A stretch of 64,000 nucleotides of DNA from Convolutriloba macropyga (taxonomy: Eukaryota): assembly GCF_964194025.1 (NCBI RefSeq), contig NC_134470.1, forward strand, positions 12,896,001 to 12,960,000. The letters run 5' to 3'. Positions 44,181 through 57,400 of the stretch are shown here, piece by piece (the first letter of the stretch is position 1; every line of letters starts with the position of its first letter). The position numbers and the translations under genes are program-made. The notes under the pieces were generated by a model, which was not told where the DNA came from, searched no databases, and saw only the letters and a list, made by a program, of their open reading frames with translations.

Positions 44181-44380
44181 NNNNNNNNNNNNNNNNNNNN
44201 NNNNNNNNNNNNNNNNNNNNNNNNNNNNNNNNNNNNNNNNNNNNNNNNNNNNNNNNNNNNNNNNNNNNNNNNNNNNNNNNNNNNNNNNNNNNNNNNNNNN
44301 NNNNNNNNNNNNNNNNNNNNNNNNNNNNNNNNNNNNNNNNNNNNNNNNNNNNNNNNNNNNNNNNNNNNNNNNNNNNNNNN
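44181..44380. other. Assembly gap (200 N)
   Basis: N run. Confidence 1.
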
Positions 44381-44563
44381 ATTGGGGCACAAACGGAAAA
44401 AATCCATTTTCGAATGAGGAATGAAAAAGACTCATTCTATAATTAGGTCACATGATTGCCGCACCTCAACTACCGATTACTGTAAACTAGGATCTATTTT
44501 GACCCCCCCCCCCCCCCCCCAAGTATGCCCACTAATCGTGGCATAACAGAATAGATCCATAGA

Positions 44564-45057
44564 CTATTTCACAACATCAAAATCATAGTTCGCTACAAGC
44601 CCAAACTGCAGTATACTCAATACCAGCGACCAGTCCTCGGCATTTTGAAGGTCGTCTTTCCTGCTGAAAATGGGCAAAGTTGCCCTGATCAGAAATACAA
44701 CGCACAAACTGCACCCAAGAATGCATTCTTTGATTAGAGATTTGAAGTCTCTGAAAACGTTCAGCACGCCTTCTTTATTTTTGAACTCCTTTCGTCCGGT
44801 TCGAAAGACCAGCTTCCATGTCGATAGAATAGCGCAATACGCAAAAATGCCGCTAGAGGTTGCGAGAATGACGATTTGTTTCATTAGAATTCCGAAGTTG
44901 ACGTTGTTCATGTCAATTATGTTGCACTGTCGTTGAGGGTTCTGGTTCTTGGCGACATTAGCCGAGAATGAAACGATGAATTCTGTCAAGCTGATAAGTA
45001 TAAATGCCATAAGTGTTCGTTTGTGGTTGACATTTAGCACAATCTGGCGGTCGTTCA
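44564..45057 (-). CDS. Divergent 7TM receptor-like protein, terminal exon (TM4-TM7)
   Basis: ccgtttag| acceptor, phase 1; four hydrophobic segments; loop Cys (QRQC) between the first two. Confidence 0.72.
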
Positions 45058-45505
45058 CTAAACGGAATTTTTGTTGGTTATCCTCCTAAGAAACCAACAG
45101 GCAGTAGCTCTGAGAACAGATATAAGTTTATAATTGCGCTGGTGCGAGTAAGACGATGCTGAGCAGAATTGTTCAGCTAGCCTTGGTTATGTTTGAAGTT
45201 TTAGGTCTCGAGTATGAACAGCCTACACTCGACACAAATTTAGCACTACTTTTTCCCTCATACGCAGGATCCTGTTGGACATTTATTTGACTCAAAATGT
45301 TAAATCAAATTTTTATTTAACCAAATGATAAGATGCTAAAAATTGGTAGCACAAAATATCGTGGGGCAAAAAAAAATCATGGTTCTTATAGGTGCATTAG
45401 TCCTAATGACGCAGTGTCTGAGTAAGCTCCTTTTTACGTTTCAACCTCAGAACAGTCATCTCCTATCGAAAAAAGTGTATTAAAACGTTTATTGATTAGA
45501 CTTCA

Positions 45506-45737
45506 TTTCAGACATGAAATAGTTCAAAAATGAATGAAATTTGATCTCAGACATGAAATAGTTCAAAAATGAATGAAATTTGATCTCAGACATGAAATAG
45601 TTCAAAAATGAATGAAATTTGATCTCAGACATGAAATAGTTCAAAAATGAATGAAATTTGATCTCAGACATGAAATAGTTCAAAAATGAATGAAATTTGA
45701 TTTCAGACATGAAATAGTTCAAAAATGAATGAAATTT
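45506..45737. repeat. ~6 x 39-bp minisatellite
   Basis: Head-to-tail tcagacatgaaatagttcaaaaatgaatgaaatttgatc. Confidence 0.95.
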
Positions 45738-47392
45738 CTTGATGAAGAGCTGACTAGCCTTCACTGTGTATTCAAAAACATCTAAATTTTCTAAATATTT
45801 TAAGGTCCTGTTCGGTTTCTGGGTCGATTATTCAGCATTCAAAGAATCAAAAATAAACAAATAAGCATTAACAGATCTTTGAAAAATAGGAAAAACCTAT
45901 GAAAAGACTATAGCTCGACCTAAAACGAATTAAAAAGATCATGCTTATCTATTATTTTTCATTAAGATTATATTCGTTCATTTAGAATAAATTTTTTCAA
46001 GATTGTGCAAAAATAGTGAAATCTTTTGTCTACTTATAAGGCAATGTTTATTTATGATTCATAAAATTGGTTGTTTTTAACGCTCTTCTACAATACTCGG
46101 CTAGTTTTGATTTTGATTTTCTTAATTTTTTTTGCTTTGGAAGAATAGAAAAAGTTGCTTCGAAAGTGTAATCAACTACTAAAAAATACATTATCAAGAA
46201 GGAGATTGAGAGAGATATTGTAATTGATGAAATTGGCCCTCTTGACTTGGGTTTAAATTGGAGAATCGTAGTAGGCGAAGTAACTATAGAAAATTTCATT
46301 GTTATAAACCCATCAATTGATGTGCATTCTCAGAAAAACAATATGTCAACATTTGTTTCAACCAGACCTCTGAAATCTTATCAAAATTTATTTCGGAAAT
46401 TGATTGTTCTAATAACTGTTATGATCACTTTCAAACTGAAGTGAAATCAATTTCTACTTTATGACGAACTGGAAATATGTTGTGAATATATATCTGCAGT
46501 TCTGTGTGCGTCTTAGAACTTGAAGTTTGCTGACTGATATCATCAATACATCATTGCCTAATTAATGCCCGACTAAAAGATTTATGTCGGGCTAGAAAAG
46601 ATTTTTGCATTCTTCTTTTTGCGATAAAAACTTTCAAGGTTTAAAAGACGGGACAAATCAAAAGCATGGAAGCAAATGAGTAAATTTTTAACATAGGAAA
46701 CTATGAAAACTGAGAAACAATTTTGTGTCGTAAATGCTTATCTATTTGTTAATGAAACAACCAAAAGAATTTTCTGAGTTTTTCTAAGTCAGCCAATTCA
46801 TCAGTCTGGCACTCAACGTGTGGGGAGAGGAGTGCTTATTTTTTACTAAAAAAAAATGCAATTAAAATAGTGATAATAATTTTGGTTTCTGTAAAATCGT
46901 AGCGGAACAGCATTAGGCCACAGTAACCTGCTTTCAGCTGACCATTTCCTATTTTTCCAAATTTCAGATGTATGTTTTCAATGGCAGCATTACTCTTTTT
47001 TGCTGCCTTTGGCCACTTTTTTTGCATCCGAAGCCTTTACTTGATAAAATCATTGAAGCCAACAATGGTCATGCTATCCTCAACTTGAAGCTCTGGTTAA
47101 GTGAGTGCTTATCCTCGCAGAGACAGCTCCACGGAGACGGGGGATTCAACTCTCATCCATTGGCGTATAAATCATCCTTATCTCTGGGCTATATGGAGTT
47201 TTGAGGCAAGCTCTTTTAAACCTTTTAGCTCTTCTACACTTTTTCTGTTCCGAACATAAGCTGATCAATTTTTACCCTTGCCAAAAAAATTATCAGTTTA
47301 CTAGGGCGACCTGGGAATCTACCCATGCAAGTAATTTTTTGAGACTGTAAAACGTTTCCTGTTATCTTTAAAACAACTGTAGCATGTTCAGC

Positions 47393-49790
47393 GTTTCTAC
47401 GTTACTGATATACGTAAAAGTATTTATGAAATCCAGTCCAGTCGTCGCAAAAACAACATGATTCTCACCTGGTAACCTCTCGTTCAGTAGATCACACATT
47501 TTGGTTGCTGGACTTTCAGTATTATTTGGCGACAAAGAACACATAGAAGCACGATGTCTTACAACAGCTCAAAAAAATTAAACTTTTTTCAGAAACTTTT
47601 GTCAGAATTTCAGTGACTGCTCATAACTTGATCCTTTTTCATGAGTAGCTCAACAGAAAAACTGTATTAACCTACTGCTTTTAACGTGTTTAGGTAACCA
47701 TTTGATAACCTCCTATTTGCCTATTTCACGACTCCACATTTTTCAGAGATTGATATATTTTTTCAGCGCTTATCAGCTCATTTAATTTTCTGGACAGCTT
47801 GTTTACGCGTTTTGAATATAATAAGGAAGAAAACGTTAATTCAAAACTTTAACTCTTTTTCAGGATGAGTTCTCCTGCGTAACGCCAGCTAAATACTCGA
47901 TAATTTAGCCCACGGTTTTTTGGCTCATTCTTTCCTGTCATATTATTGTGTTTAAAGTCAATATTTCAAAAAAACATGGTCTCGACTTTTATAGGGTTGC
48001 TTATGAGCGCAGTAAATCATTGATGCCGAATTCTTTTATGCTCGGCTGGCTAGGTCAGTAATACATTTTTGGTGCCCCATTCATTTGAGAACATCTATGC
48101 AATATTCTAATCAGATCAGACTTTCAATGCTTAAGAGCAGAAAATGACAATTCAAAAATATCAAACCGAACCAGTCTGTTTTGAGAATCAAAAACTACTG
48201 AAAAAAAACCTAGAACCAGTTAGAGTTTAAAAGCTTGTATCCGTATCAATTCAAATAAGCTTTAACCATTTTTTGAAAAATCCTAAATTTCCTAATGCAT
48301 CGATTAACAAAACTGAACAAATCAAGCCTGAAACAAATTTTCTGAGAAAATATTTTCCCCGATCTATTCAAACTTCTGTTTTTTGTTTAAGGAAACCTAG
48401 TCGATCGCTGTCCTTCAATGAAAAAAATTAAAATTTGTATATTAGCAAAAGATGGATTTTGAAACGATTGCATGCACTCACAGCTGTTTAGGGCAACAAA
48501 AACTAACTAATTTTTTGAGAGAATATTTTGAATTTAAAAAATTGCTCTTATGAGCTTTCAAACGGATACAAGTACGTCTTCTGTAGAGTTTCTACCGCAC
48601 TGATATACGTAAAAGTATTTATGAAATCCAGTCCAGTTTTTGCAAAAACAACATGATTTTGACGTGGTAAACTCTCGCTCAGCAGATCAAACAATTTGGT
48701 TGCTGGAATTTCTGTATTATTCTGCGACAAAGAACACTATAAGGGTGCTGAGTCTTACAACAGCTCACAGAAATACAACTTTTGTTCAAAAACTTTTGTC
48801 AGAAATTGAGTGACGGTTCATAACTTTATCTTTTGTCATGTGTAGCTCGACAGTGAGACTAACACAATCTAGAATGGTTGCGCACAGGACAGTTTCTGAC
48901 ATCTTTTCCTGTACAACCAATAATTGGCGGCACGCTGCTTTTTGTTGTTAACATGTGGTCGAATGTCTTTCAAACGAATGTATTAACCTATTGCCTTTTC
49001 CGTGTTCAGGTAAATATTTGATGACATCCTCTTTGAATATTTCACGGCTCCGCACTTTTCAGAGTTAGTTACAATTTTCAGCGCTTATCAGCTCATTTAA
49101 TTTTCTGTACTGCTTCTTTACGCTGTTTACTATTAATTTTAAAAAATGTTAATTCAAAACTGTACATCTAGTTCAGGTTTATTTTTCCTGCGTAACGCCA
49201 TCTACTCGGTGATTTACCCGGTTTGTTACCCCATTTTGCTCCTGTGTCATATTATTGTGTTAAAAGAAATTACCTAAAAACATATTCTCGACTTTTATGT
49301 GGTTGAGTATGTCAGCAGTAAGTCATTGAAGCCGAATTCATTTATGATCGACTGGCTAGCAATACATCAATGCAATATTCTAATTAGAGCAAACTTTCAA
49401 TGTTTAAGAGCAGAAAGTATTACAGCAAACCAGTCTGTTTTTAACACCGAAAACTAGTAAAAAAAAATCTTAGAACCTATTATAGTTTAAAAGTTTGTAT
49501 CCGTATCAATTCAAATAAGCCTTAACGATTTTGTGAAAAACCATAAAACCCTAAAACAGCCAATGCATCAACTAACAAATATGAGCCTGAAACAACTTTT
49601 CGTAGGAAACGTATTTTTCCTGCTGAAATCAAATTTCTGTTTTGTGGTCAGAAAAACTAATCGATCACTGCTTTGCGATAGAAAAAATACAATTCATATT
49701 TTAGCACAAGATGGATTTTGAAACGATTGCACGCAAAGTTGTTTAGGACAGCACAAAGTAACTAATTTTCTTGAGATATAAAATTTGAAA
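47393..49790. repeat. Old diverged tandem duplication, 2 x ~1.2 kb
   Basis: Shared anchors ctgatatacgtaaaagtatttatgaaatccagtccag (47405/48600), cagcgcttatcagctcatttaattttctg, gtatccgtatcaattcaaataagc, gatggattttgaaacgattgca. Confidence 0.85.
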
Positions 49791-50615
49791 AAAAAAGATT
49801 TTCGAGAACCAATAGGTTCAAATACAGGTTTACTTTTGAAAATTCATTTAAATTAGTTTAATTAGAATAAAAACATTTCATAATCTTCAGAAATCTTTTC
49901 ATTTTTCCGTACCTGTTACGTGCTGGTGCTTCAACGAATTCTCCATAAAGGTGCTCAGAAAATTTCTACAAGAAATCAAAAACCGACAAAAATGGAAAAG
50001 AACTGATCCCCAACCATTGCAGAACAAAAAATGGCTCAAATAGCTCCATTGACATTTCACTTCAGTCCAACGAAAACAGCAAAAAAAATCGTTAATTGAG
50101 ATGTGAACTCAAAAAATGAATTTTCTCAAAACCGTATTTTAAAAAATTGCACAGGATTGATTCGAAAATAGGATGATCATCAAGTAAGGTAAAGGATTAA
50201 TCTTCGTTGAAACCCCCCAACTAGAAACACGATAGCATGTAAAGACACTCCTGAAAAAAAATTAACAAACCAAACATAAAAAGCTATGATTCTCAACAAA
50301 ATGAGAAACACGAAGACACCACGGCTTCAGAAAAATTGGAAAACGATCGAAACTGAAAACCCGATTTGCCATCATTTTAAAGCATTAGTTTCAATCAATC
50401 TTGTGACTTCGTTGATTATGGGAGAGCATAATTGTGACCGCGTGCAATCACTACATTTGAACTAATTGAACGCTATCTCAACATTATTATTTGAGCAAGA
50501 TCCACTTATGAAATACAGTTGAAGCCAAGGTTTTCAACGATTGCACGTTTTTCAACGTTTATTGAAATCAATAAACACTCAACGCAAACTTTACAAAGTG
50601 TCTTTTTTTAAGTAC

Positions 50616-50913
50616 CTGCAACTTCTAACCAGTTGATTGCAACCTGTAGCATTCCTCCCCCAACTAGTGAAATGGTAAACTGCATCAGACTTTCGTTGCA
50701 ACTCTCAACAATCTTTGATCCAGCGATAGCTTTTACAAAAAACGTGGCCAAACACATGAAGAAGGTAGAAGACACTAAAGGACAGTAGCAAACTTCGAAA
50801 TCTTTCTCGCGGTTTGACTCGTTTCGGGCTAAGAGTGATATGGTTAAACGAAATGAGCGATATGCACCAAAAAGGCTGGCGGGTATGCAAAGAATTAACC
50901 ACACGTAGTACAT
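50616..50913 (-). CDS. 7TM receptor-like protein, first exon variant A (TM1-TM3)
   Basis: ATG, 298 nt, gcag|gtact phase-1 donor; three hydrophobic segments; Cys before TM3. Confidence 0.75.
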
Positions 50914-52873
50914 TTTTCAATAATCAAAAAGCTATTTTCTGTTAAAATCCTGACAGATTTTTATTTATGCTGGATTAATAAACAAAAACTGGTTATAAGT
51001 AAAGAAAGGCATATCAAGTTAACGAACTGTAGAGCAGGAAAATATATACCAAAGAGTGATGCAGCAACTTTAAAATGCTAGAATACCGATTTTTTAAACG
51101 AAATAAATGCGACATTTTTGCACCACATTACCAAGACAACTTGGATTAGTTTGTATTGTTTTTTACAGATGCAATTAGCTAATTGTAATTATAACTCAAC
51201 TGCTTGGAGGTTGACGTAGAAGGTATTGCTAAGAGTAATGAAAGTGATATATATTTGTAAGCTGCTGTTGCGTTGAACAAGAACAGATTTTTAAGTTAAT
51301 TGTCTAACATTTGAACGTATTTTCAAACAATGGCCGGTTGTTTCCGTTTGAAACGAAAAGGAAAAGTCATTAAATCTACAGACTCTTAAAGAAACAATAC
51401 TTCAGAAAACAATAGAGCTTTAAAATGCTTTAAAAATGATATATATGCTAAGAAACTAAGAAACAAAACATAATTAAAGAACGTTTGGGACCATTGAAGG
51501 CATATTTTCCATAGTACAATTTATTTCCTTTTTTGTTGTGATTCAAAATGATATTTTGGGAGTTCATTAAGGAATTAAGAGGAAGCGGCTGTTTTGTTTT
51601 AAACCACTCAGTACAAAATGGTAACTTAAGATAGTAATACAAAGTCAAAAGTGATTTTTTTGTTTAATACATTGGCAAAATTTTGAAAAGCGTTTTAAAA
51701 GTTATGACAGTCCAGGTTCCTCTTTGAGCATCTTTTTACTCAAATTTCCTCAAGTCAGCTGTTGCATTCGCAAAAAAAAAATTATTGAACTTTTCCAACC
51801 TCTTCAAGAATTTCAACTATTAATGAATGACTACCCTGAAATAGTTGAAGTTTTTTGTAATCTTGAGAAAGAACAACAAATCAGACAAAAATAATTTTCA
51901 TAAGCGCATCGAGACAATAGGTAGGATTTTCGATTTTTATATTATAATTATCTCGTCAAGTATCATTTTAATTTTCTTACAGATGGTTTAAACTAAAAAT
52001 TCGTTACTGAATCTGTGAAAACAAACGATCAGTATGACTTTGAACACAAGCTTTTAAACTGTTTTTGTCATACAATGACAATAAAAAATAACTTTACGAG
52101 CGCAGAAAATTTGAAATGAATATCCAGCTGTTTTAAAATTTTTTAAGAAAGCAATTGAACATTGCAAACTGGTACGAAATTGCCTATCCATTTCGTTACT
52201 GCCTATTCCGTTAATTATCAAATACTGCGCCCTGGTTTTTTTTGTAAAAGAGAAAGAACAAAGATAAGCACCTGACACACACTGCATTTCCAAATCAAAA
52301 AATGGTCGATTGCAATTTCAAGTTGAACTTTACAAGTTCTTAAGAGCGGCTTGTGTTTGTTGGGTGATGGGAGATTAGGCAAAAAATCGATAACTGGCAG
52401 CCATTAAGCGAATATGTTCAACTAACTTTGCGCGGAAATTTGGCGAAAACCAATCAAAACACTTCAATAGCCGCTTGACGCTACAAAGTACACCAATGTC
52501 TCTAAACAATTGTTTTAACATTAAAAAAGAGTAGATATAATGTATAATGCACCACTTTTTAGCTTTTCACATCCTTTTTACAACCTATGTTAAAATCTGA
52601 GAAGAGAATTTTTGTTAAAACTTACTGCGGAAAGAGTGAAGGGTTTATTTTTTCAGAAAATACTTTATTCTTAATATTATAGAGCTATGGTGGCGCGGGT
52701 AACTTCAAAAAAACTATTAGCATAATTGTGGGATATAAATTGAAGTGTCCCGTACCAAACTTCAAGTGTTAATCAATACTGAGCAATAGTAAATGCAAGT
52801 CTCCCATGTAGTATAATTTGCTCGCTTTCTCACTTGAAATTTGCTTCTTTCAAGCGTATTTTAACGGCGCAAC

Positions 52874-52947
52874 AGTCACAATGGAGCAGTAAGGAGAACA
52901 AACAGCTTGTGAGAGGGAGAGCATGGTTTCGATCCCTGTACGGAACT
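52874..52947 (+). other. tRNA-derived SINE-head-like segment
   Basis: tggagcagtaagg ... gtttcgatccc; 3' end resembles 29023-29095. Confidence 0.4.
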
Positions 52948-54155
52948 TTAGTTTTGCACTTGGCTTAGACTTGCCAAGTCTTGGCCAAGTCTGAAAAGTC
53001 TTAAATCTGTGATGATCATAGCTCTGAATCAGTACTGATATCGAGACTTTGAATTAGACTTGCCCAGTACTGATATTGACTTGGCGTTAAGTACGGGGTT
53101 GCAAATTTACAACATTAAAAACCCGTTTTCGGTGTTTTTGTAAGCTATTATCATGATAAGACCATTGTTAGAGAGACTTGAGTACTTTGTAGCGTCAAAC
53201 TTATTTTGAAGTATAGACTGCAAGTGTTTTATTTGGTGTTCGAATAATTTCCACTAAATGTTTGTGGAATATTTTTGCTAATGGCTTGCGAAATAGCTTC
53301 CCCTATCGAGTTTTTGCCTATTATCCTACACCCCGTTCATTGTCCAAAAATTATAGCTCTTTTGTCCGCCTTCATTAATGAAAGTTTTTCTTTATCTTTA
53401 TATATATTGGATTGGGTGAACACAGGAACACACTAATGAATACTTTTGCATCAGTGCATAAGTGGCCAATTCTGCAGCCTAACAAAATTGGGTAATTCAT
53501 TACAAATCACAGTTTTTCCTTTAAGTGCCAAGTTTGCTGGCTTTGTAAAATTTGCATAGGTAGACCGGCTGCTTAAAATTGCTTTTTGACATGGTTGAGA
53601 ACTTGTTCTTTACTTATTTTTGTCTTTTTTCAGGTCGTTTTGCTTGCTTGGAGCGTCATCTATTAGACTTTTTTGTGTTCTATGCACAGATTTTCTTGAG
53701 ATGTTCTTTCATTTACAACAACCTCGCAATTAAAACTTGGTTCACCTTAATGTATGCCAAAGCGAAATCAAATATGTCCAACTTTAAACAATTTTTGTTC
53801 GGGATTGATAATAAATTTGATATTTTAGCGAATTTTGGCCAGTCTTTTTACAGATCATTGACTCAATATTCGTTTTCTCTAGGATTTTGATTTGAAATTT
53901 TAGCCCAAGTTGCTCGCGCACCGAAGTCACATAAGAGCAGATCCAAATAGCGCCCGCATTGAGTTAGTTATTCACAAAACAAAAAAGGCCTGGATAGCCG
54001 TTCGCGAACGAAAAGACTTTATACCGGACAATAGTTTTGACAAAGTTTGATCAGGAAGCCATTTTGGCCACTCTAGTTGTCATTCCTATCTGGGTTCTGA
54101 AACTTAAAATCTTTATCAGCGATAAATCAGTGAATCTTAAATAAAATTTCCTTAC

Positions 54156-54453
54156 CTGCAACCTCCAGCCAATTGATTGCAACCTGCAACATTGCACCCC
54201 CAATGAGGGAAAAGGAGAACTGCATTAGACTTTCGTTGCAACTTTCCACCATTTTTGATCCAGCGATGGCTTTGACGAAAAACGTTGCCAAACACATGAA
54301 GAAAGTAGAAGACACTAGGGGACAGTAGCAAACTTCGAAATCTTTGTTGCGATTTGATTCGTTTTGGGCCAAAAGTGATATGAATAAACGCAAAGAGCGA
54401 TACGCACCAAAAAGACTGGCAGGTATGCAAAGAATTAACCACACATAGTGCAT
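54156..54453 (-). CDS. 7TM receptor-like protein, first exon variant B (TM1-TM3)
   Basis: ATG, 298 nt, gcag|gtaag donor; 10 of 99 aa differ from variant A, with many synonymous changes. Confidence 0.75.
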
Positions 54454-57400
54454 TTTAATTCCGAAGTTTCAGTTTTTTTCACTAATCACTTAACTGTCAG
54501 ATTTCTGAGCCAGGTTTTAATTTCAATAAAACAAAAAACGCGGCAAATTTTATTTGTAAATAACTATTCGGCTCCAACTTATTCAAGTAAAACGAAAATC
54601 GAATTCTTTGCTATAGATTTTTCTATTATAATAGTCTTTTCAATCGAAGTTAACGAAATGAAGATAATTATTTAGAGGAATGTGGTTATTTATTATTTCT
54701 CGGTGGCCAGCTTGGCTATCATTTTCTGATTTTGAAAAAGCCTCGAAACAATATTTGTCCGATATCATTAGACAATGTTAGCGTACGATTTAAAACAGCG
54801 CAGCATTAAAAATTGGAAGTTGATGAAAATTGTTTACAAAAAAGCGAAGCGTTTAAAATAATTGCATCGGATATTTAGGAAAACTGAGGGAATTACAAAC
54901 GATAATGAAAACGTTTCCACATTCAAGGAGAAATTATCTAACTCTTCACTAGAATAGAGAGAGAGAGAAAAAAAGAGTTTAGAATTGTGATAGCATTTAA
55001 GCCTTCTAAGCGAAGGAAATAGACATTTTCAGCTGTCAATTGCCTGATTATTTTTATTTGACAGAACAACAAAGACAGCAACTGAGAACCCCGATAAACA
55101 GCCCTGTCTCTCAAGGAAGTTGAAATATTAAAAGGAAGCATGCATTGATAGATATAATAATTTGGCATTTTCGGCATCGTTTTGTTCAAATATCCTTGGC
55201 ACGAATATTTGTGTTGCACAGGAGAACACTGATTAATTCTTTCTCCGATAGTCGAAACTAAAGGCTCTTTACAACTTCAAATTTGAGAAAATAATTCGAT
55301 CAATTATTGATTAAATTGACGAGGGTTACAAGTTTTTTCAGTAATCATAGTTCTAACTGTGTTTCAATCACCATCAGTTAAGAGAATATAACTTTGCGAG
55401 TTTTTGGAGTTGCTGATTAGAATATCCAAAACCATGGATATTTGTGGTGCCAACAAAAACCGATGGACTTTTATAGTCTTGGATATAGTTACCAAGAAAT
55501 CATAAACTAGAACCAACATTGCTTTTTCAAAGGGATAAGACAGTTATATGATGCTCGGTTAACCTTTTAATTTTTGTTTACTGCTAGTTTTTGTCATCTT
55601 TTTGAAATTTAATTTTTATGGTTTTACATGACACAATGAAAAAAATGGTCTTCGATAGTTAGTCCCTTAACGTTGCAATGCAAACAAAAGTTCGAAAAAC
55701 TCGACATAAAAAATGAACAACAAAATTTCTTTGACCTATGAAATATTCAATAGCGTTGCAACTTTCTGGGCCAAACTAAAAACGGATGCACAGATCCAGT
55801 GCAACTGAATTGAAAGTTTTCTTGTGGATTCACGATATAGTTACCTCCCAGAGTTTTAAAAGACAACCTAATGTGGTTTACAATGGTCGCCAACAAGTGA
55901 TTGGGTTGTCCTAAAACATAAAGACCCCAGTGATTCTGGAACTTTTATCATGTAAGATCTTATCTGGTTACACGATAACAAATTCTGCCCTACGTGAACT
56001 TTAGTCGTGTAAGATCTGATAAGATACTTATCAGGTTTTATACGATAATAATTCAATTTGCTGAATTGTTATATTATAAGATATTGCCGTATAACGCGGT
56101 CAATTTCTTATGAAAGCAAAAACAAACTGTCGAAACAAAAAACTATAAACAAATTGTATCGAAACAACTTGTTTATAATTTTTCGTTTCGGCAGATATGT
56201 TTTTTATCTTGTAAGAGTTTGTGGCACACAAAATTTTTTGTTGACCCGAGAGGATTTGGTAAATTTAAATGTACTTTATATACTTTTTGTAATGTTCAAT
56301 ATAGAAAACCCCAATCTATATTTAAAGTTTTTATGGAGGTTGTTAACATGATGTCAATTGGGCTTTAGGGTAACTGTAAGACGACTTGGGAGGAATCTCT
56401 CAAAAAGCAGTTTTTATAGCAGACAACGCAGCCTACTGAAGCTTGCCTTTTAATTATTTATGACCTCATATAAAAATTAAAATGAGGTAAACATGGGATT
56501 CATTGTAAAAACTCGACAATTTTGTTGAAAGTTTACCCACAGTACTCCAATTGTTGCATTTCAGGTCTTATGGTTTACCCATTTTTTCTTAGTTTCTAAC
56601 CGCCTGGAATATAACTCGGAAAATTGGCCGTTTTAAAAATAGAAATTCTCTTGCCTTAACCAACTGAGTGACATCCAGACCGCCATTGAATGCCCAAAAT
56701 AGGAATGCAAAATTTTAAGCCCTAGACAACTCATGCTTAATTCTAACACCCTGGACATTCAGTATCTACTCCTGCATTAGTGTATTGGTATAAGATACAT
56801 TTCATTTAGAAACTTGAGCTTGATCACTTCAGATTGAGAATAAAATCTTTGTTTCTCTCTTTCTCTCTCTGGTGCGATTTTTGCCCACAAAAAGACGTCG
56901 AATTACATTTCTGATACAGCGAAAGTTTTTTAAAAAAATTGAGGCAAGTTTCATTTATTATGTTCAAGAAAATTGGTATTGGTTTGTATCAAGAATGATG
57001 TTCTGAGAGAGGCAAAATGGAAACCTTGGAGAACTAGTTATTGTATTTTTGTCATAAGTTTTTTGCCGGCATTCAAAAAGTTTTTCAAACCCCTAGATTT
57101 CAGAAGGTGCCAAATTGGGAACCACTGAAACACTATGATCCTTCTTTATCCAAAAACAAAAAAAATGATGGTGCTAAAAATCTGGTTACTAGGGAACAAA
57201 TTATAGATATTAGGGTCTAACAATGTCTACAAAATTCTTTTTGCAATTGACATATATTTGACGCCTTTGCATACTCATTTCAACTCGCTTTTCTAGTGGA
57301 CGGTCTGAAAATGGTCTGTTTTATAAAACAGTGTTTTGATATGGAAAAATAACAAACTTTTCAGTTTTTTCACAGCAAAGTGCAAAATTTAAACCAAAAC

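What the first reader, a model, noticed from the sequence alone, without database searches (positions are those of the whole stretch)
44564..54453. 7TM receptor with two variable first exons and one shared second exon
Seen: two 298-nt ATG exons (50616-50913, 54156-54453), about 90% identical in protein with many third-position differences. Both end in a phase-1 donor that joins 44564-45057 in frame (G|TG AAC GAC). Either join gives 263 aa with 7 hydrophobic segments, a Cys before TM3 and a Cys in the TM4-5 loop (GPCR disulfide pattern), almost no N-terminus, and no DRY/NPxxY. No intact exon-2 paralog lies between the two first exons. Inference: both halves are under purifying selection and share a constant half, a protocadherin/UGT1-like variable-constant design in a divergent receptor.
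Basis: partly seen in the sequence, partly recalled or inferred. Interest (0 to 1): 0.72.

Follow-up and report, generated by a model that had tools for sequence, protein, structure and literature searches.

The report
Receptor gene with two alternative first exons
An acoel worm (Convolutriloba macropyga) has a small, unnamed receptor-like membrane protein gene with two old, still-conserved copies of its first coding exon but only one second exon, so it most likely makes two slightly different receptors from one gene; this gene layout is already known from other families, and RNA proof is still missing.

Summary
On the minus strand, two 298-nt ATG exons (54453-54156 and 50913-50616) are 86% identical in DNA and 89/99 in protein. 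Each ends in a phase-1 G|GT donor that fits the single acceptor of a 494-nt exon (45057-44564). Either join gives 263 aa.

- **Selection:** 30 of the 42 differences are synonymous (dN/dS 0.07, dS 0.72). Similarity stops within 3 nt of the exon edges, so both copies have long been under purifying selection.
- **One exon 2:** no second exon 2, intact or decayed, lies in 30001-64000. The 1.18-Gb genome holds no other close copy.
- **Family:** the genome is Convolutriloba macropyga. The gene belongs to a family of about 12 members, named only as "uncharacterized" in acoels. All members share this intron position and end at the seventh helix.
- **Fold:** a confident model of a paralog matches only GPCRs (Z 15-18). 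No GPCR class can be assigned, and no Pfam family or class A motif fits.
- **Missing evidence:** the only public runs I could reach were DNA, so neither splice junction has been seen.

Best reading, at about 0.68: two alternative first exons feed one shared exon, as in insect Gr39a/Gr28b, protocadherins and UGT1A. It is a new member of a known kind. The scan has noted similar variable/constant loci elsewhere in this genome.

The parts
54156..54453 (-). First coding exon 1a (distal). It runs from the ATG to a phase-1 donor and encodes helices 1-3 (99 codons plus 1 nt).
   Evidence: An in-frame stop lies 18 nt before the ATG. The exon is present in DNA contigs of three samples.
50616..50913 (-). 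First coding exon 1b (proximal), a paralog of 1a: 86% nt identity and 89/99 aa.
   Evidence: An in-frame stop lies 6 nt before the ATG. Similarity to 1a is confined to 50613-50916.
44564..45057 (-). The single shared second exon. It encodes helices 4-7 and the stop codon (TAG at 44564-44566).
   Evidence: It is the only close copy in the window and in the genome.
54150..54155 (-). Splice donor of exon 1a, GTAAGG (strong consensus).
50610..50615 (-). Splice donor of exon 1b, GTACTT (weaker match to consensus).
45058..45059 (-). The AG of the single acceptor (ccgtttAG|TG) in front of exon 2.
54494..54504 (-). The 11-mer AAATCTGACAG, 41 nt upstream of the exon 1a ATG. It is a candidate promoter or 5'UTR element kept in both copies.
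   Evidence: The pattern AAATCTG[AT]CAG occurs only twice in the 64-kb window, and both sites are here.
50950..50960 (-). The 11-mer AAATCTGTCAG, 37 nt upstream of the exon 1b ATG. It is the counterpart of the element at 54494-54504.
45058..50615 (-). Intron between exon 1b and exon 2 (5558 nt). For transcripts that start at exon 1a, the intron would be 45058-54155 (9098 nt) and would contain exon 1b.
   Evidence: It holds no coding-like sequence of the family.

Best explanation
This is one gene of an acoel-restricted, GPCR-fold seven-helix family, and it has two alternative first coding exons. Each first exon carries its own start codon and encodes helices 1-3. Each is most likely transcribed from its own promoter and spliced from its phase-1 donor to the single acceptor of exon 2, which encodes helices 4-7.

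The result would be two 263-aa isoforms that differ at 10 residues. Four of these lie in the outer half of helix 3, downstream of the conserved cysteine (residues 80-87 against Cys72). By analogy with other GPCRs, this is where ligand pockets lie.

What is shown:
- the exons, their phases and the single exon 2;
- long-term purifying selection on both first exons;
- the family-wide intron position;
- the GPCR fold, modelled on a paralog.

What is inferred:
- that both exons are transcribed and joined to exon 2;
- that each has its own promoter;
- that the protein is a receptor.

The duplication arose within the Convolutriloba lineage. The closest homolog in another assembly has a single first exon.
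For: - **Exons, phases and join:**
- **Selection:** dN/dS 0.074, dS 0.72, and 30 of 42 changes synonymous (P 1e-11). At that divergence an unused exon could not have kept its ATG, its 99-codon frame and its donor.
- **Limits of similarity:** it is confined to 304 nt, and 200-nt flanks score at or near shuffled sequence (downstream at the shuffle mean, upstream about 3 SD above).
- **Start exons:** in-frame stops lie 18 and 6 nt before the ATGs, so each must be a translation-start exon, and including both in tandem is out of frame.
- **One exon 2:** there is one in the window and one close copy in the genome, with no relic of a second.
- **Intron position:** all paralogs have the same phase-1 intron after INWLEV(A/T) and stop right after helix 7. 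NCBI models of paralogs use that junction.
- **Assembly check:** DNA contigs of three samples tile 50776-56499 in the assembly's order, broken only by short uncovered stretches and at the two high-copy repeats.
- **Upstream element:** a shared 11-mer sits about 40 nt upstream of both ATGs.
- **Fold:** the AF2 model has pLDDT 86 and pTM 0.84. The top 50 Foldseek PDB hits are all GPCRs. VIA gives Z 15.3-18.1, all GPCRs or GPCR-like 7TM domains. The Atlas V1R/TAS2R cluster matches at TM 0.73.
- **Cysteines and topology:** the conserved Cys pair maps before helix 3 and into the helix 4-5 loop. Lys+Arg counts are 15 inside against 4 outside.
Against: - I have no RNA evidence. The run search returned only four runs of unrecorded kind, which proved to be DNA contigs.
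- Neither protein search returned this gene's own product, so I have no sign that it is annotated. The tools may withhold the window's own proteins, so this is weak.
- The exon 1b donor, GTACTT, is a poor match to consensus.
- The two isoforms would differ by only 10 residues, so any functional difference may be small.
- The structure was modelled on a paralog that is 30-37% identical, not on this protein.
Confidence: 0.68

Rival explanations
1. One of the two first exons is a recently orphaned relic. In this reading a whole-gene tandem duplicate lost its exon 2 or its promoter only lately, so the exon still looks intact but is no longer used.
For: - Whole-gene tandem duplicates occur in the family: S. 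roscoffensis P0023 and P0031 differ in both halves.
- The exon 1b donor is weak.
- There are no RNA data.
Against: - A dN/dS of 0.07 over dS 0.72 leaves room, by my rough estimate, for only about a tenth of one branch to have been neutral.
- No relic of an exon 2a lies between the first exons.
- Both copies keep their ATG, frame, donor and the upstream 11-mer.
- An upstream exon left with a working promoter and donor would by default splice to the next acceptor, which is the best explanation itself.
Confidence: 0.15
2. This is an assembly artefact. The true locus would be two complete tandem genes, with the second exon 2 lost in a collapse or hidden in the gap at 44181-44380.
For: - A 200-N gap lies 184 nt downstream of the stop codon.
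- Heterozygosity is reported as 3.65%, and haplotypic duplication had to be purged (PMC13650328).
Against: - The gap lies downstream of exon 2. It is not between exon 1a and exon 1b, where a partner exon would have to sit.
- 45058-54155 contains no N.
- k-mer contigs of three DNA samples tile the stretch between the first exons in the same order.
- None of the 4694 contigs holds another close exon 2.
- A dS of 0.72 excludes the two exons being alleles.
Confidence: 0.05
3. Exon 1a is kept because it acts without exon 2. It might be translated from an unspliced transcript into a 108-aa three-helix protein, or be spliced to some other, unrelated exon.
For: The unspliced reading frame runs on for only 9 codons past the donor and then stops, which gives a 108-aa ORF.
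Against: - No member of the family is known as a three-helix protein.
- The donor is kept in both copies.
- The first three helices need helices 4-7 to form the fold.
- No other family exon lies nearby.
Confidence: 0.04

Closest known systems
Insect chemoreceptor loci with alternative long 5' exons and shared 3' exons (Drosophila Gr39a, Gr28b, Or69a; PMC3011837)
   Same: Tandem paralogous N-terminal exons each encode several transmembrane helices and each is joined to the same C-terminal exon or exons. Individual variable exons are gained and lost in particular lineages.
   Different: Those proteins are seven-helix ion channels and do not have the GPCR fold. Their variable exons encode most of the protein and the shared part is small. 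Here the variable part is helices 1-3 and the shared part is the larger half. There are only two variable exons, 90% identical, and no transcript evidence.
Clustered protocadherin and UGT1A variable/constant loci (from my own knowledge, not tested here)
   Same: Each variable first exon has its own start codon, and presumably its own promoter, and splices to common downstream exons. An upstream variable exon skips over the downstream ones.
   Different: Those loci have many variable exons and a documented choice of promoter. Here there are two exons and only a candidate 11-nt upstream element, with no expression data.
G protein-coupled receptor superfamily (classes A, B, C, F and adhesion)
   Same: The model is a seven-helix bundle that aligns over 210-255 residues at Z 15-18. 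It has a conserved Cys before helix 3 and another in the helix 4-5 loop. Charge counts indicate that the N-terminus lies outside the cell.
   Different: No sequence-level match to any Pfam family or PDB chain was found. There is no DRY and no NPxxY. The protein ends right at helix 7, with no helix 8 or tail, and has almost no N-terminus. Scores are tied across classes, so it cannot be placed in any one.
Small vertebrate chemoreceptors V1R/TAS2R
   Same: This was the best match among the Atlas predicted structures (TM 0.73 over 254 residues). These receptors are also short, have a short N-terminus and form lineage-specific families.
   Different: The likeness is in fold only. There is no sequence similarity, those genes are typically single-exon (own knowledge), and this family is restricted to acoels.

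Membership tests
GPCR superfamily (fold level) | Seven transmembrane helices packed as in solved GPCRs | tested here: met
   The model of paralog P0025, built with this gene's exons in the alignment, has pLDDT 86. The top 50 rows in PDB by Foldseek are all GPCRs, and the top 50 by VIA-align are GPCRs or GPCR-like 7TM domains, Z 15.3-18.1. This gene's own spliced protein was not modelled.
GPCR superfamily (fold level) | Cysteine at the top of helix 3 paired with a cysteine in extracellular loop 2 | tested here: met
   Cys72 and Cys144 align to C80 and C152 of the model, just before helix 3 and in the helix 4-5 loop. The loop cysteine is invariant in the exon-2 alignments, and the first is conserved in nearly all exon 1 sequences. 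The disulfide bond itself is inferred.
GPCR class A (rhodopsin-like) | Match to Pfam 7tm_1, with DRY at the end of helix 3 and NPxxY in helix 7 | tested here: not met
   There is no Pfam hit at E up to 10, and no DRY or NPxxY. Helix 3 ends in INWLEV and helix 7 ends in (C/N)(F/Y)Y(N/D)F followed by the stop.
GPCR (functional sense) | Couples to heterotrimeric G proteins on ligand binding | not testable with these tools
   The lack of a helix 8 and a C-terminal tail makes classical coupling uncertain.
Variable/constant alternative-first-exon locus | Two or more tandem paralogous first exons, each with its own ATG and a donor in the same phase | tested here: met
Variable/constant alternative-first-exon locus | A single set of downstream exons for all the first exons | tested here: met
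Variable/constant alternative-first-exon locus | Every variable exon is kept by selection | tested here: met
   dN/dS 0.074, P 1e-11, and flanks unalignable.
Variable/constant alternative-first-exon locus | Transcripts that join each variable exon to the constant exon | not testable with these tools
   Only DNA runs were reachable. RNA-seq of this species exists according to PMC13650328.
Insect-type seven-helix ion channels (GR/OR/GRL) | The fold of Orco, ORs and GRs, about 350-450 aa with long cytoplasmic helix extensions | tested here: not met
   I considered this family because the protein ends at helix 7. No such structure appears among the top 50 matches of either PDB search, and the protein is only 263 aa.
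Frag1/DRAM/Sfk1 (PF10277) | Sequence or fold match to the family | tested here: not met
   The only support was a feature score of 0.84 for exon 2 alone, which is within the noise range. There is no Pfam hit, and the fold search gives GPCRs.

The most novel reading that the evidence does not exclude
Acoels may build receptor diversity by duplicating first exons in front of a shared exon, and may choose one promoter per sensory cell, as vertebrate protocadherins do. This locus, together with the other variable/constant loci the scan noted in the same genome (s1-217429, s1-224118), would then be examples of a recurrent, independently evolved strategy in an early-branching bilaterian. It would act on an acoel-only GPCR-fold family that has no helix 8 and no known coupling motifs.
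Probability: 0.15. Interest if true: 0.7.

Novelty: new member of a known kind. Interest (0 to 1): 0.42.

Why it matters
If both junctions are expressed, this is a clean and minimal case of the variable/constant gene design. It has only two variable exons, the duplication can be dated, and the isoform differences are clear, four of the ten in the outer half of helix 3. It lies in an animal lineage whose sensory receptors are almost unstudied.

The work also defines a small, unnamed, acoel-restricted family with a GPCR fold. Its members are about 263 aa, have no N-terminus and no tail, and match no Pfam family. Current annotation calls them only "uncharacterized". The design itself is already known from insect chemoreceptors, protocadherins and UGT1A, so the gain is breadth rather than a new principle.

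Tried and rejected
- **Sequence searches for a named family:**
  - Pfam on the three exon peptides and on six family members gave nothing credible.
  - A word-based search of 5.8 billion proteins with exon 2 found nothing.
  - A profile against PDB sequences gave 0 hits.
- **Atlas feature search:** it pointed weakly to Frag1/DRAM (0.84). I rejected this after the fold searches.
- **Other seven-helix families:** I considered SWEET, PQ-loop, microbial rhodopsin and insect GR-type channels because the protein is short and ends at helix 7. None appeared in the fold searches.
- **RNA test:** the single run search, made with exon 2, returned four runs of unrecorded kind. Laid on 50500-56499, they proved to be DNA, with even depth over introns and no splice joints. 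The junctions therefore remain untested.
- **Relic of a second exon 2:** none was found with the family HMM on six-frame pieces of 30001-64000 or with nhmmer.
- **Both first exons in one mRNA:** rejected, because stops lie 6 and 18 nt before the ATGs and the phase does not fit.
- **Same layout in another species:** the closest homolog (43% identical, ENA contigs) has one first exon 5 kb upstream of exon 2 and none further up to 13.4 kb. The duplication is therefore lineage-specific, and conservation of the layout could not be used as evidence.
- **Spliced protein:** I did not enter the spliced 263-aa protein into any tool, because it has no contiguous reference. Its fold is inferred from a paralog.
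- **Gap:** I did not read or fill the N gap.
Full report
**1. What is in the sequence**

All features lie on the minus strand.
- Exon 1a is 54453..54156 and exon 1b is 50913..50616. Each is 298 nt and begins with ATG.
- Exon 1a ends in G|GTAAGG and exon 1b in G|GTACTT.
- Exon 2 is 45057..44564. It follows ccgtttAG and ends in TAG.
- The donors are in phase 1. Either join reads ...LEVA-V-NDRQ... and gives 263 aa.
- In-frame stops lie 18 nt (1a) and 6 nt (1b) before the ATGs. Each exon must therefore start translation, and including both in tandem would be out of frame.

**2. The two first exons are old and both are constrained**

- They share 256/298 nt and 89/99 residues. The differences fall 9/3/30 on codon positions 1/2/3.
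- Nei-Gojobori estimates are dN 0.054, dS 0.72 and dN/dS 0.074. Thirty of the 42 changes are synonymous, against 9 expected (binomial P 1e-11). Fourteen of 38 four-fold sites differ.
- Similarity stops within 3 nt of each exon edge (54153-54456 against 50613-50916). The 200 nt downstream score like shuffled sequence, and the 200 nt upstream only slightly above it.
- One short island remains. The 11-mer AAATCTG(A/T)CAG lies 41 and 37 nt upstream of the two ATGs. These are its only two occurrences in the window on either strand, and paralogs lack it. I treat it as a candidate promoter or 5'UTR element and no more than that.

**3. There is only one exon 2**

- tblastn and blastn find no other copy in the window.
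- A family HMM on all six-frame pieces of 30001-64000, and nhmmer, find only the real exon 2 (E 4e-66). Everything else has E above 1.
- In the whole genome (1,175,981,408 bases) the next best exon 2 is 30% identical and lies elsewhere.
- The N gap at 44181-44380 lies downstream of the stop codon. A partner for exon 1a would have to lie between the first exons, so the gap cannot hide it.
- The four public runs that hold exon 2 proved to be DNA contigs of three samples from one study. Their pieces cover most of 50776-56499 in the assembly's order. The breaks are short uncovered stretches and two high-copy repeats.

**4. Organism and family**

- The assembly length equals that published for the acoel Convolutriloba macropyga, 1,175.98 Mb (PMC13650328).
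- Paralogs elsewhere in the genome match NCBI proteins of that species. All are named "uncharacterized protein".
- A profile of exon 2 searched against 1.84 billion representative proteins found 24 hits. The only named ones come from C. macropyga and Symsagittifera roscoffensis.
- The genome holds about 12 members on several chromosomes.
- Every member has the phase-1 intron after INWLEV(A/T), and every member stops right after the seventh hydrophobic segment. One paralog uses a GC donor at this intron.
- NCBI's models P0025 and P0006 use exactly this junction, which validates the join proposed here.
- Some paralogs split the second half by one further intron.

**5. Fold**

- I could not enter the spliced protein by reference. 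I therefore modelled paralog P0025 (268 aa) with a 20-row family alignment that included this gene's three exon peptides.
- The model has pLDDT 86.2, pTM 0.84 and seven long helices.
- The top 50 Foldseek hits in PDB are all GPCRs, with TM 0.5-0.68 and a best E of 1.5e-3.
- An independent all-against-representatives search gave Z 15.3-18.1 over 210-255 residues. Every one of the top 50 is a GPCR or a GPCR-like 7TM domain (classes A, B, C and F, adhesion GPCRs, and the lysosomal protein LYCHOS), and the scores are tied across classes.
- The best Atlas match is a V1R/TAS2R cluster at TM 0.73.
- Cys72 and Cys144 map just before helix 3 and into the helix 4-5 loop.
- Lys+Arg counts are 15 on the predicted inner side and 4 on the outer side.
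- A CNES sequon beside Cys72 recurs in several paralogs.
- There is no Pfam family, no similarity to any PDB sequence, and no DRY or NPxxY.
- The family therefore has a GPCR fold but cannot be placed in any class. That it acts as a receptor is an inference.

**6. How it most likely works**

Each first exon is a start exon with its own upstream region. A transcript that begins at 1a would splice its strong donor over exon 1b, which has no in-frame way to be included, to the one acceptor at 45057. A transcript that begins at 1b would use the same acceptor.

The two isoforms would differ at H2Y, L21F, F24T, Q30R, N36E, M68I, S80T, F81I, I84V and A87G. Four of the ten lie in the outer half of helix 3, downstream of the conserved cysteine (residues 80-87 against Cys72). 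By analogy with other GPCRs this is pocket-lining territory. The clustering is suggestive but not significant.

**7. Rivals**

- **A recently orphaned exon.** By my rough estimate the dN/dS leaves room for only about a tenth of one branch to have been neutral. No relic of a second exon 2 exists. An upstream exon with a live promoter would splice to exon 2 anyway.
- **An assembly error.** The position of the gap, the DNA contigs of three samples and the absence of another close exon 2 in any contig all argue against it.
- **A stand-alone three-helix product.** This cannot be excluded, but nothing supports it.

**8. Comparison and novelty**

- The same design is described for the insect chemoreceptor loci Gr39a, Gr28b and Or69a, with long alternative N-terminal exons and shared C-terminal exons (PMC3011837). 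From my own knowledge it also applies to protocadherins and UGT1A.
- The closest homolog in another assembly is 43% identical. It has one first exon 5 kb upstream of exon 2 and none further out to 13.4 kb. The duplication is therefore specific to this lineage.
- Earlier notes of this scan list other variable/constant loci in the same genome. I did not test them.
- My verdict is a real and well-supported locus that is a new member of a known kind, with the decisive RNA evidence still missing.

Noticed in passing
L049:2074-5644 (G000:C2:39314073-39317643): A paralog on another chromosome carries a perfect tandem duplication of 1787 bp at 99.5% identity. It contains the paralog's middle coding exon, and the two copies differ by one residue. 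This is either a very recent exon duplication or a haplotype assembly artefact. It contrasts with the old duplication studied here, where only the exon is conserved.
   Followed up: partly
window 52700-53100 and 55900-56100: Two short stretches, one between the first exons and one upstream of exon 1a, have summed k-mer depths of 1e4-1e5 in the DNA contigs, against about 50 elsewhere. They are high-copy repeats, probably small transposable elements.
   Followed up: no
window 45508-45737 and 44503-44520: A 39-bp unit is repeated 5.9 times at 99% identity in the intron, 450 bp upstream of the exon 2 acceptor. A run of 18 G on the gene's strand lies 44 nt after the stop codon.
   Followed up: no
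L021:1779-1786 (G000:C1, about 13553442): The paralog encoding NCBI protein P0006 uses a GC-AG intron (donor G|GCAAGT) at the family's conserved phase-1 position. The NCBI model reads through this junction.
   Followed up: partly
L047:1-7119: In one haplotype or assembly of the closest foreign homolog, a long retroelement lies upstream of exon 2, where the other contigs have the intron. It carries reverse transcriptase, RNase H and integrase domains and a PEG10-like capsid domain. It pushes exon 1 more than 10 kb away.
   Followed up: no
Whole family (P0001-P0040; loci L002-L046): This GPCR-fold family of about 263 aa has the motifs KDFD(V/I)YY, C..GGC.LQIAINWLEV, N.(R/K)Q(I/L)V..NHK and L(I/M)RE..(I/L)G. 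It appears only in acoel sequences among 1.84 billion representative proteins, and no database gives it a name.
   Followed up: partly
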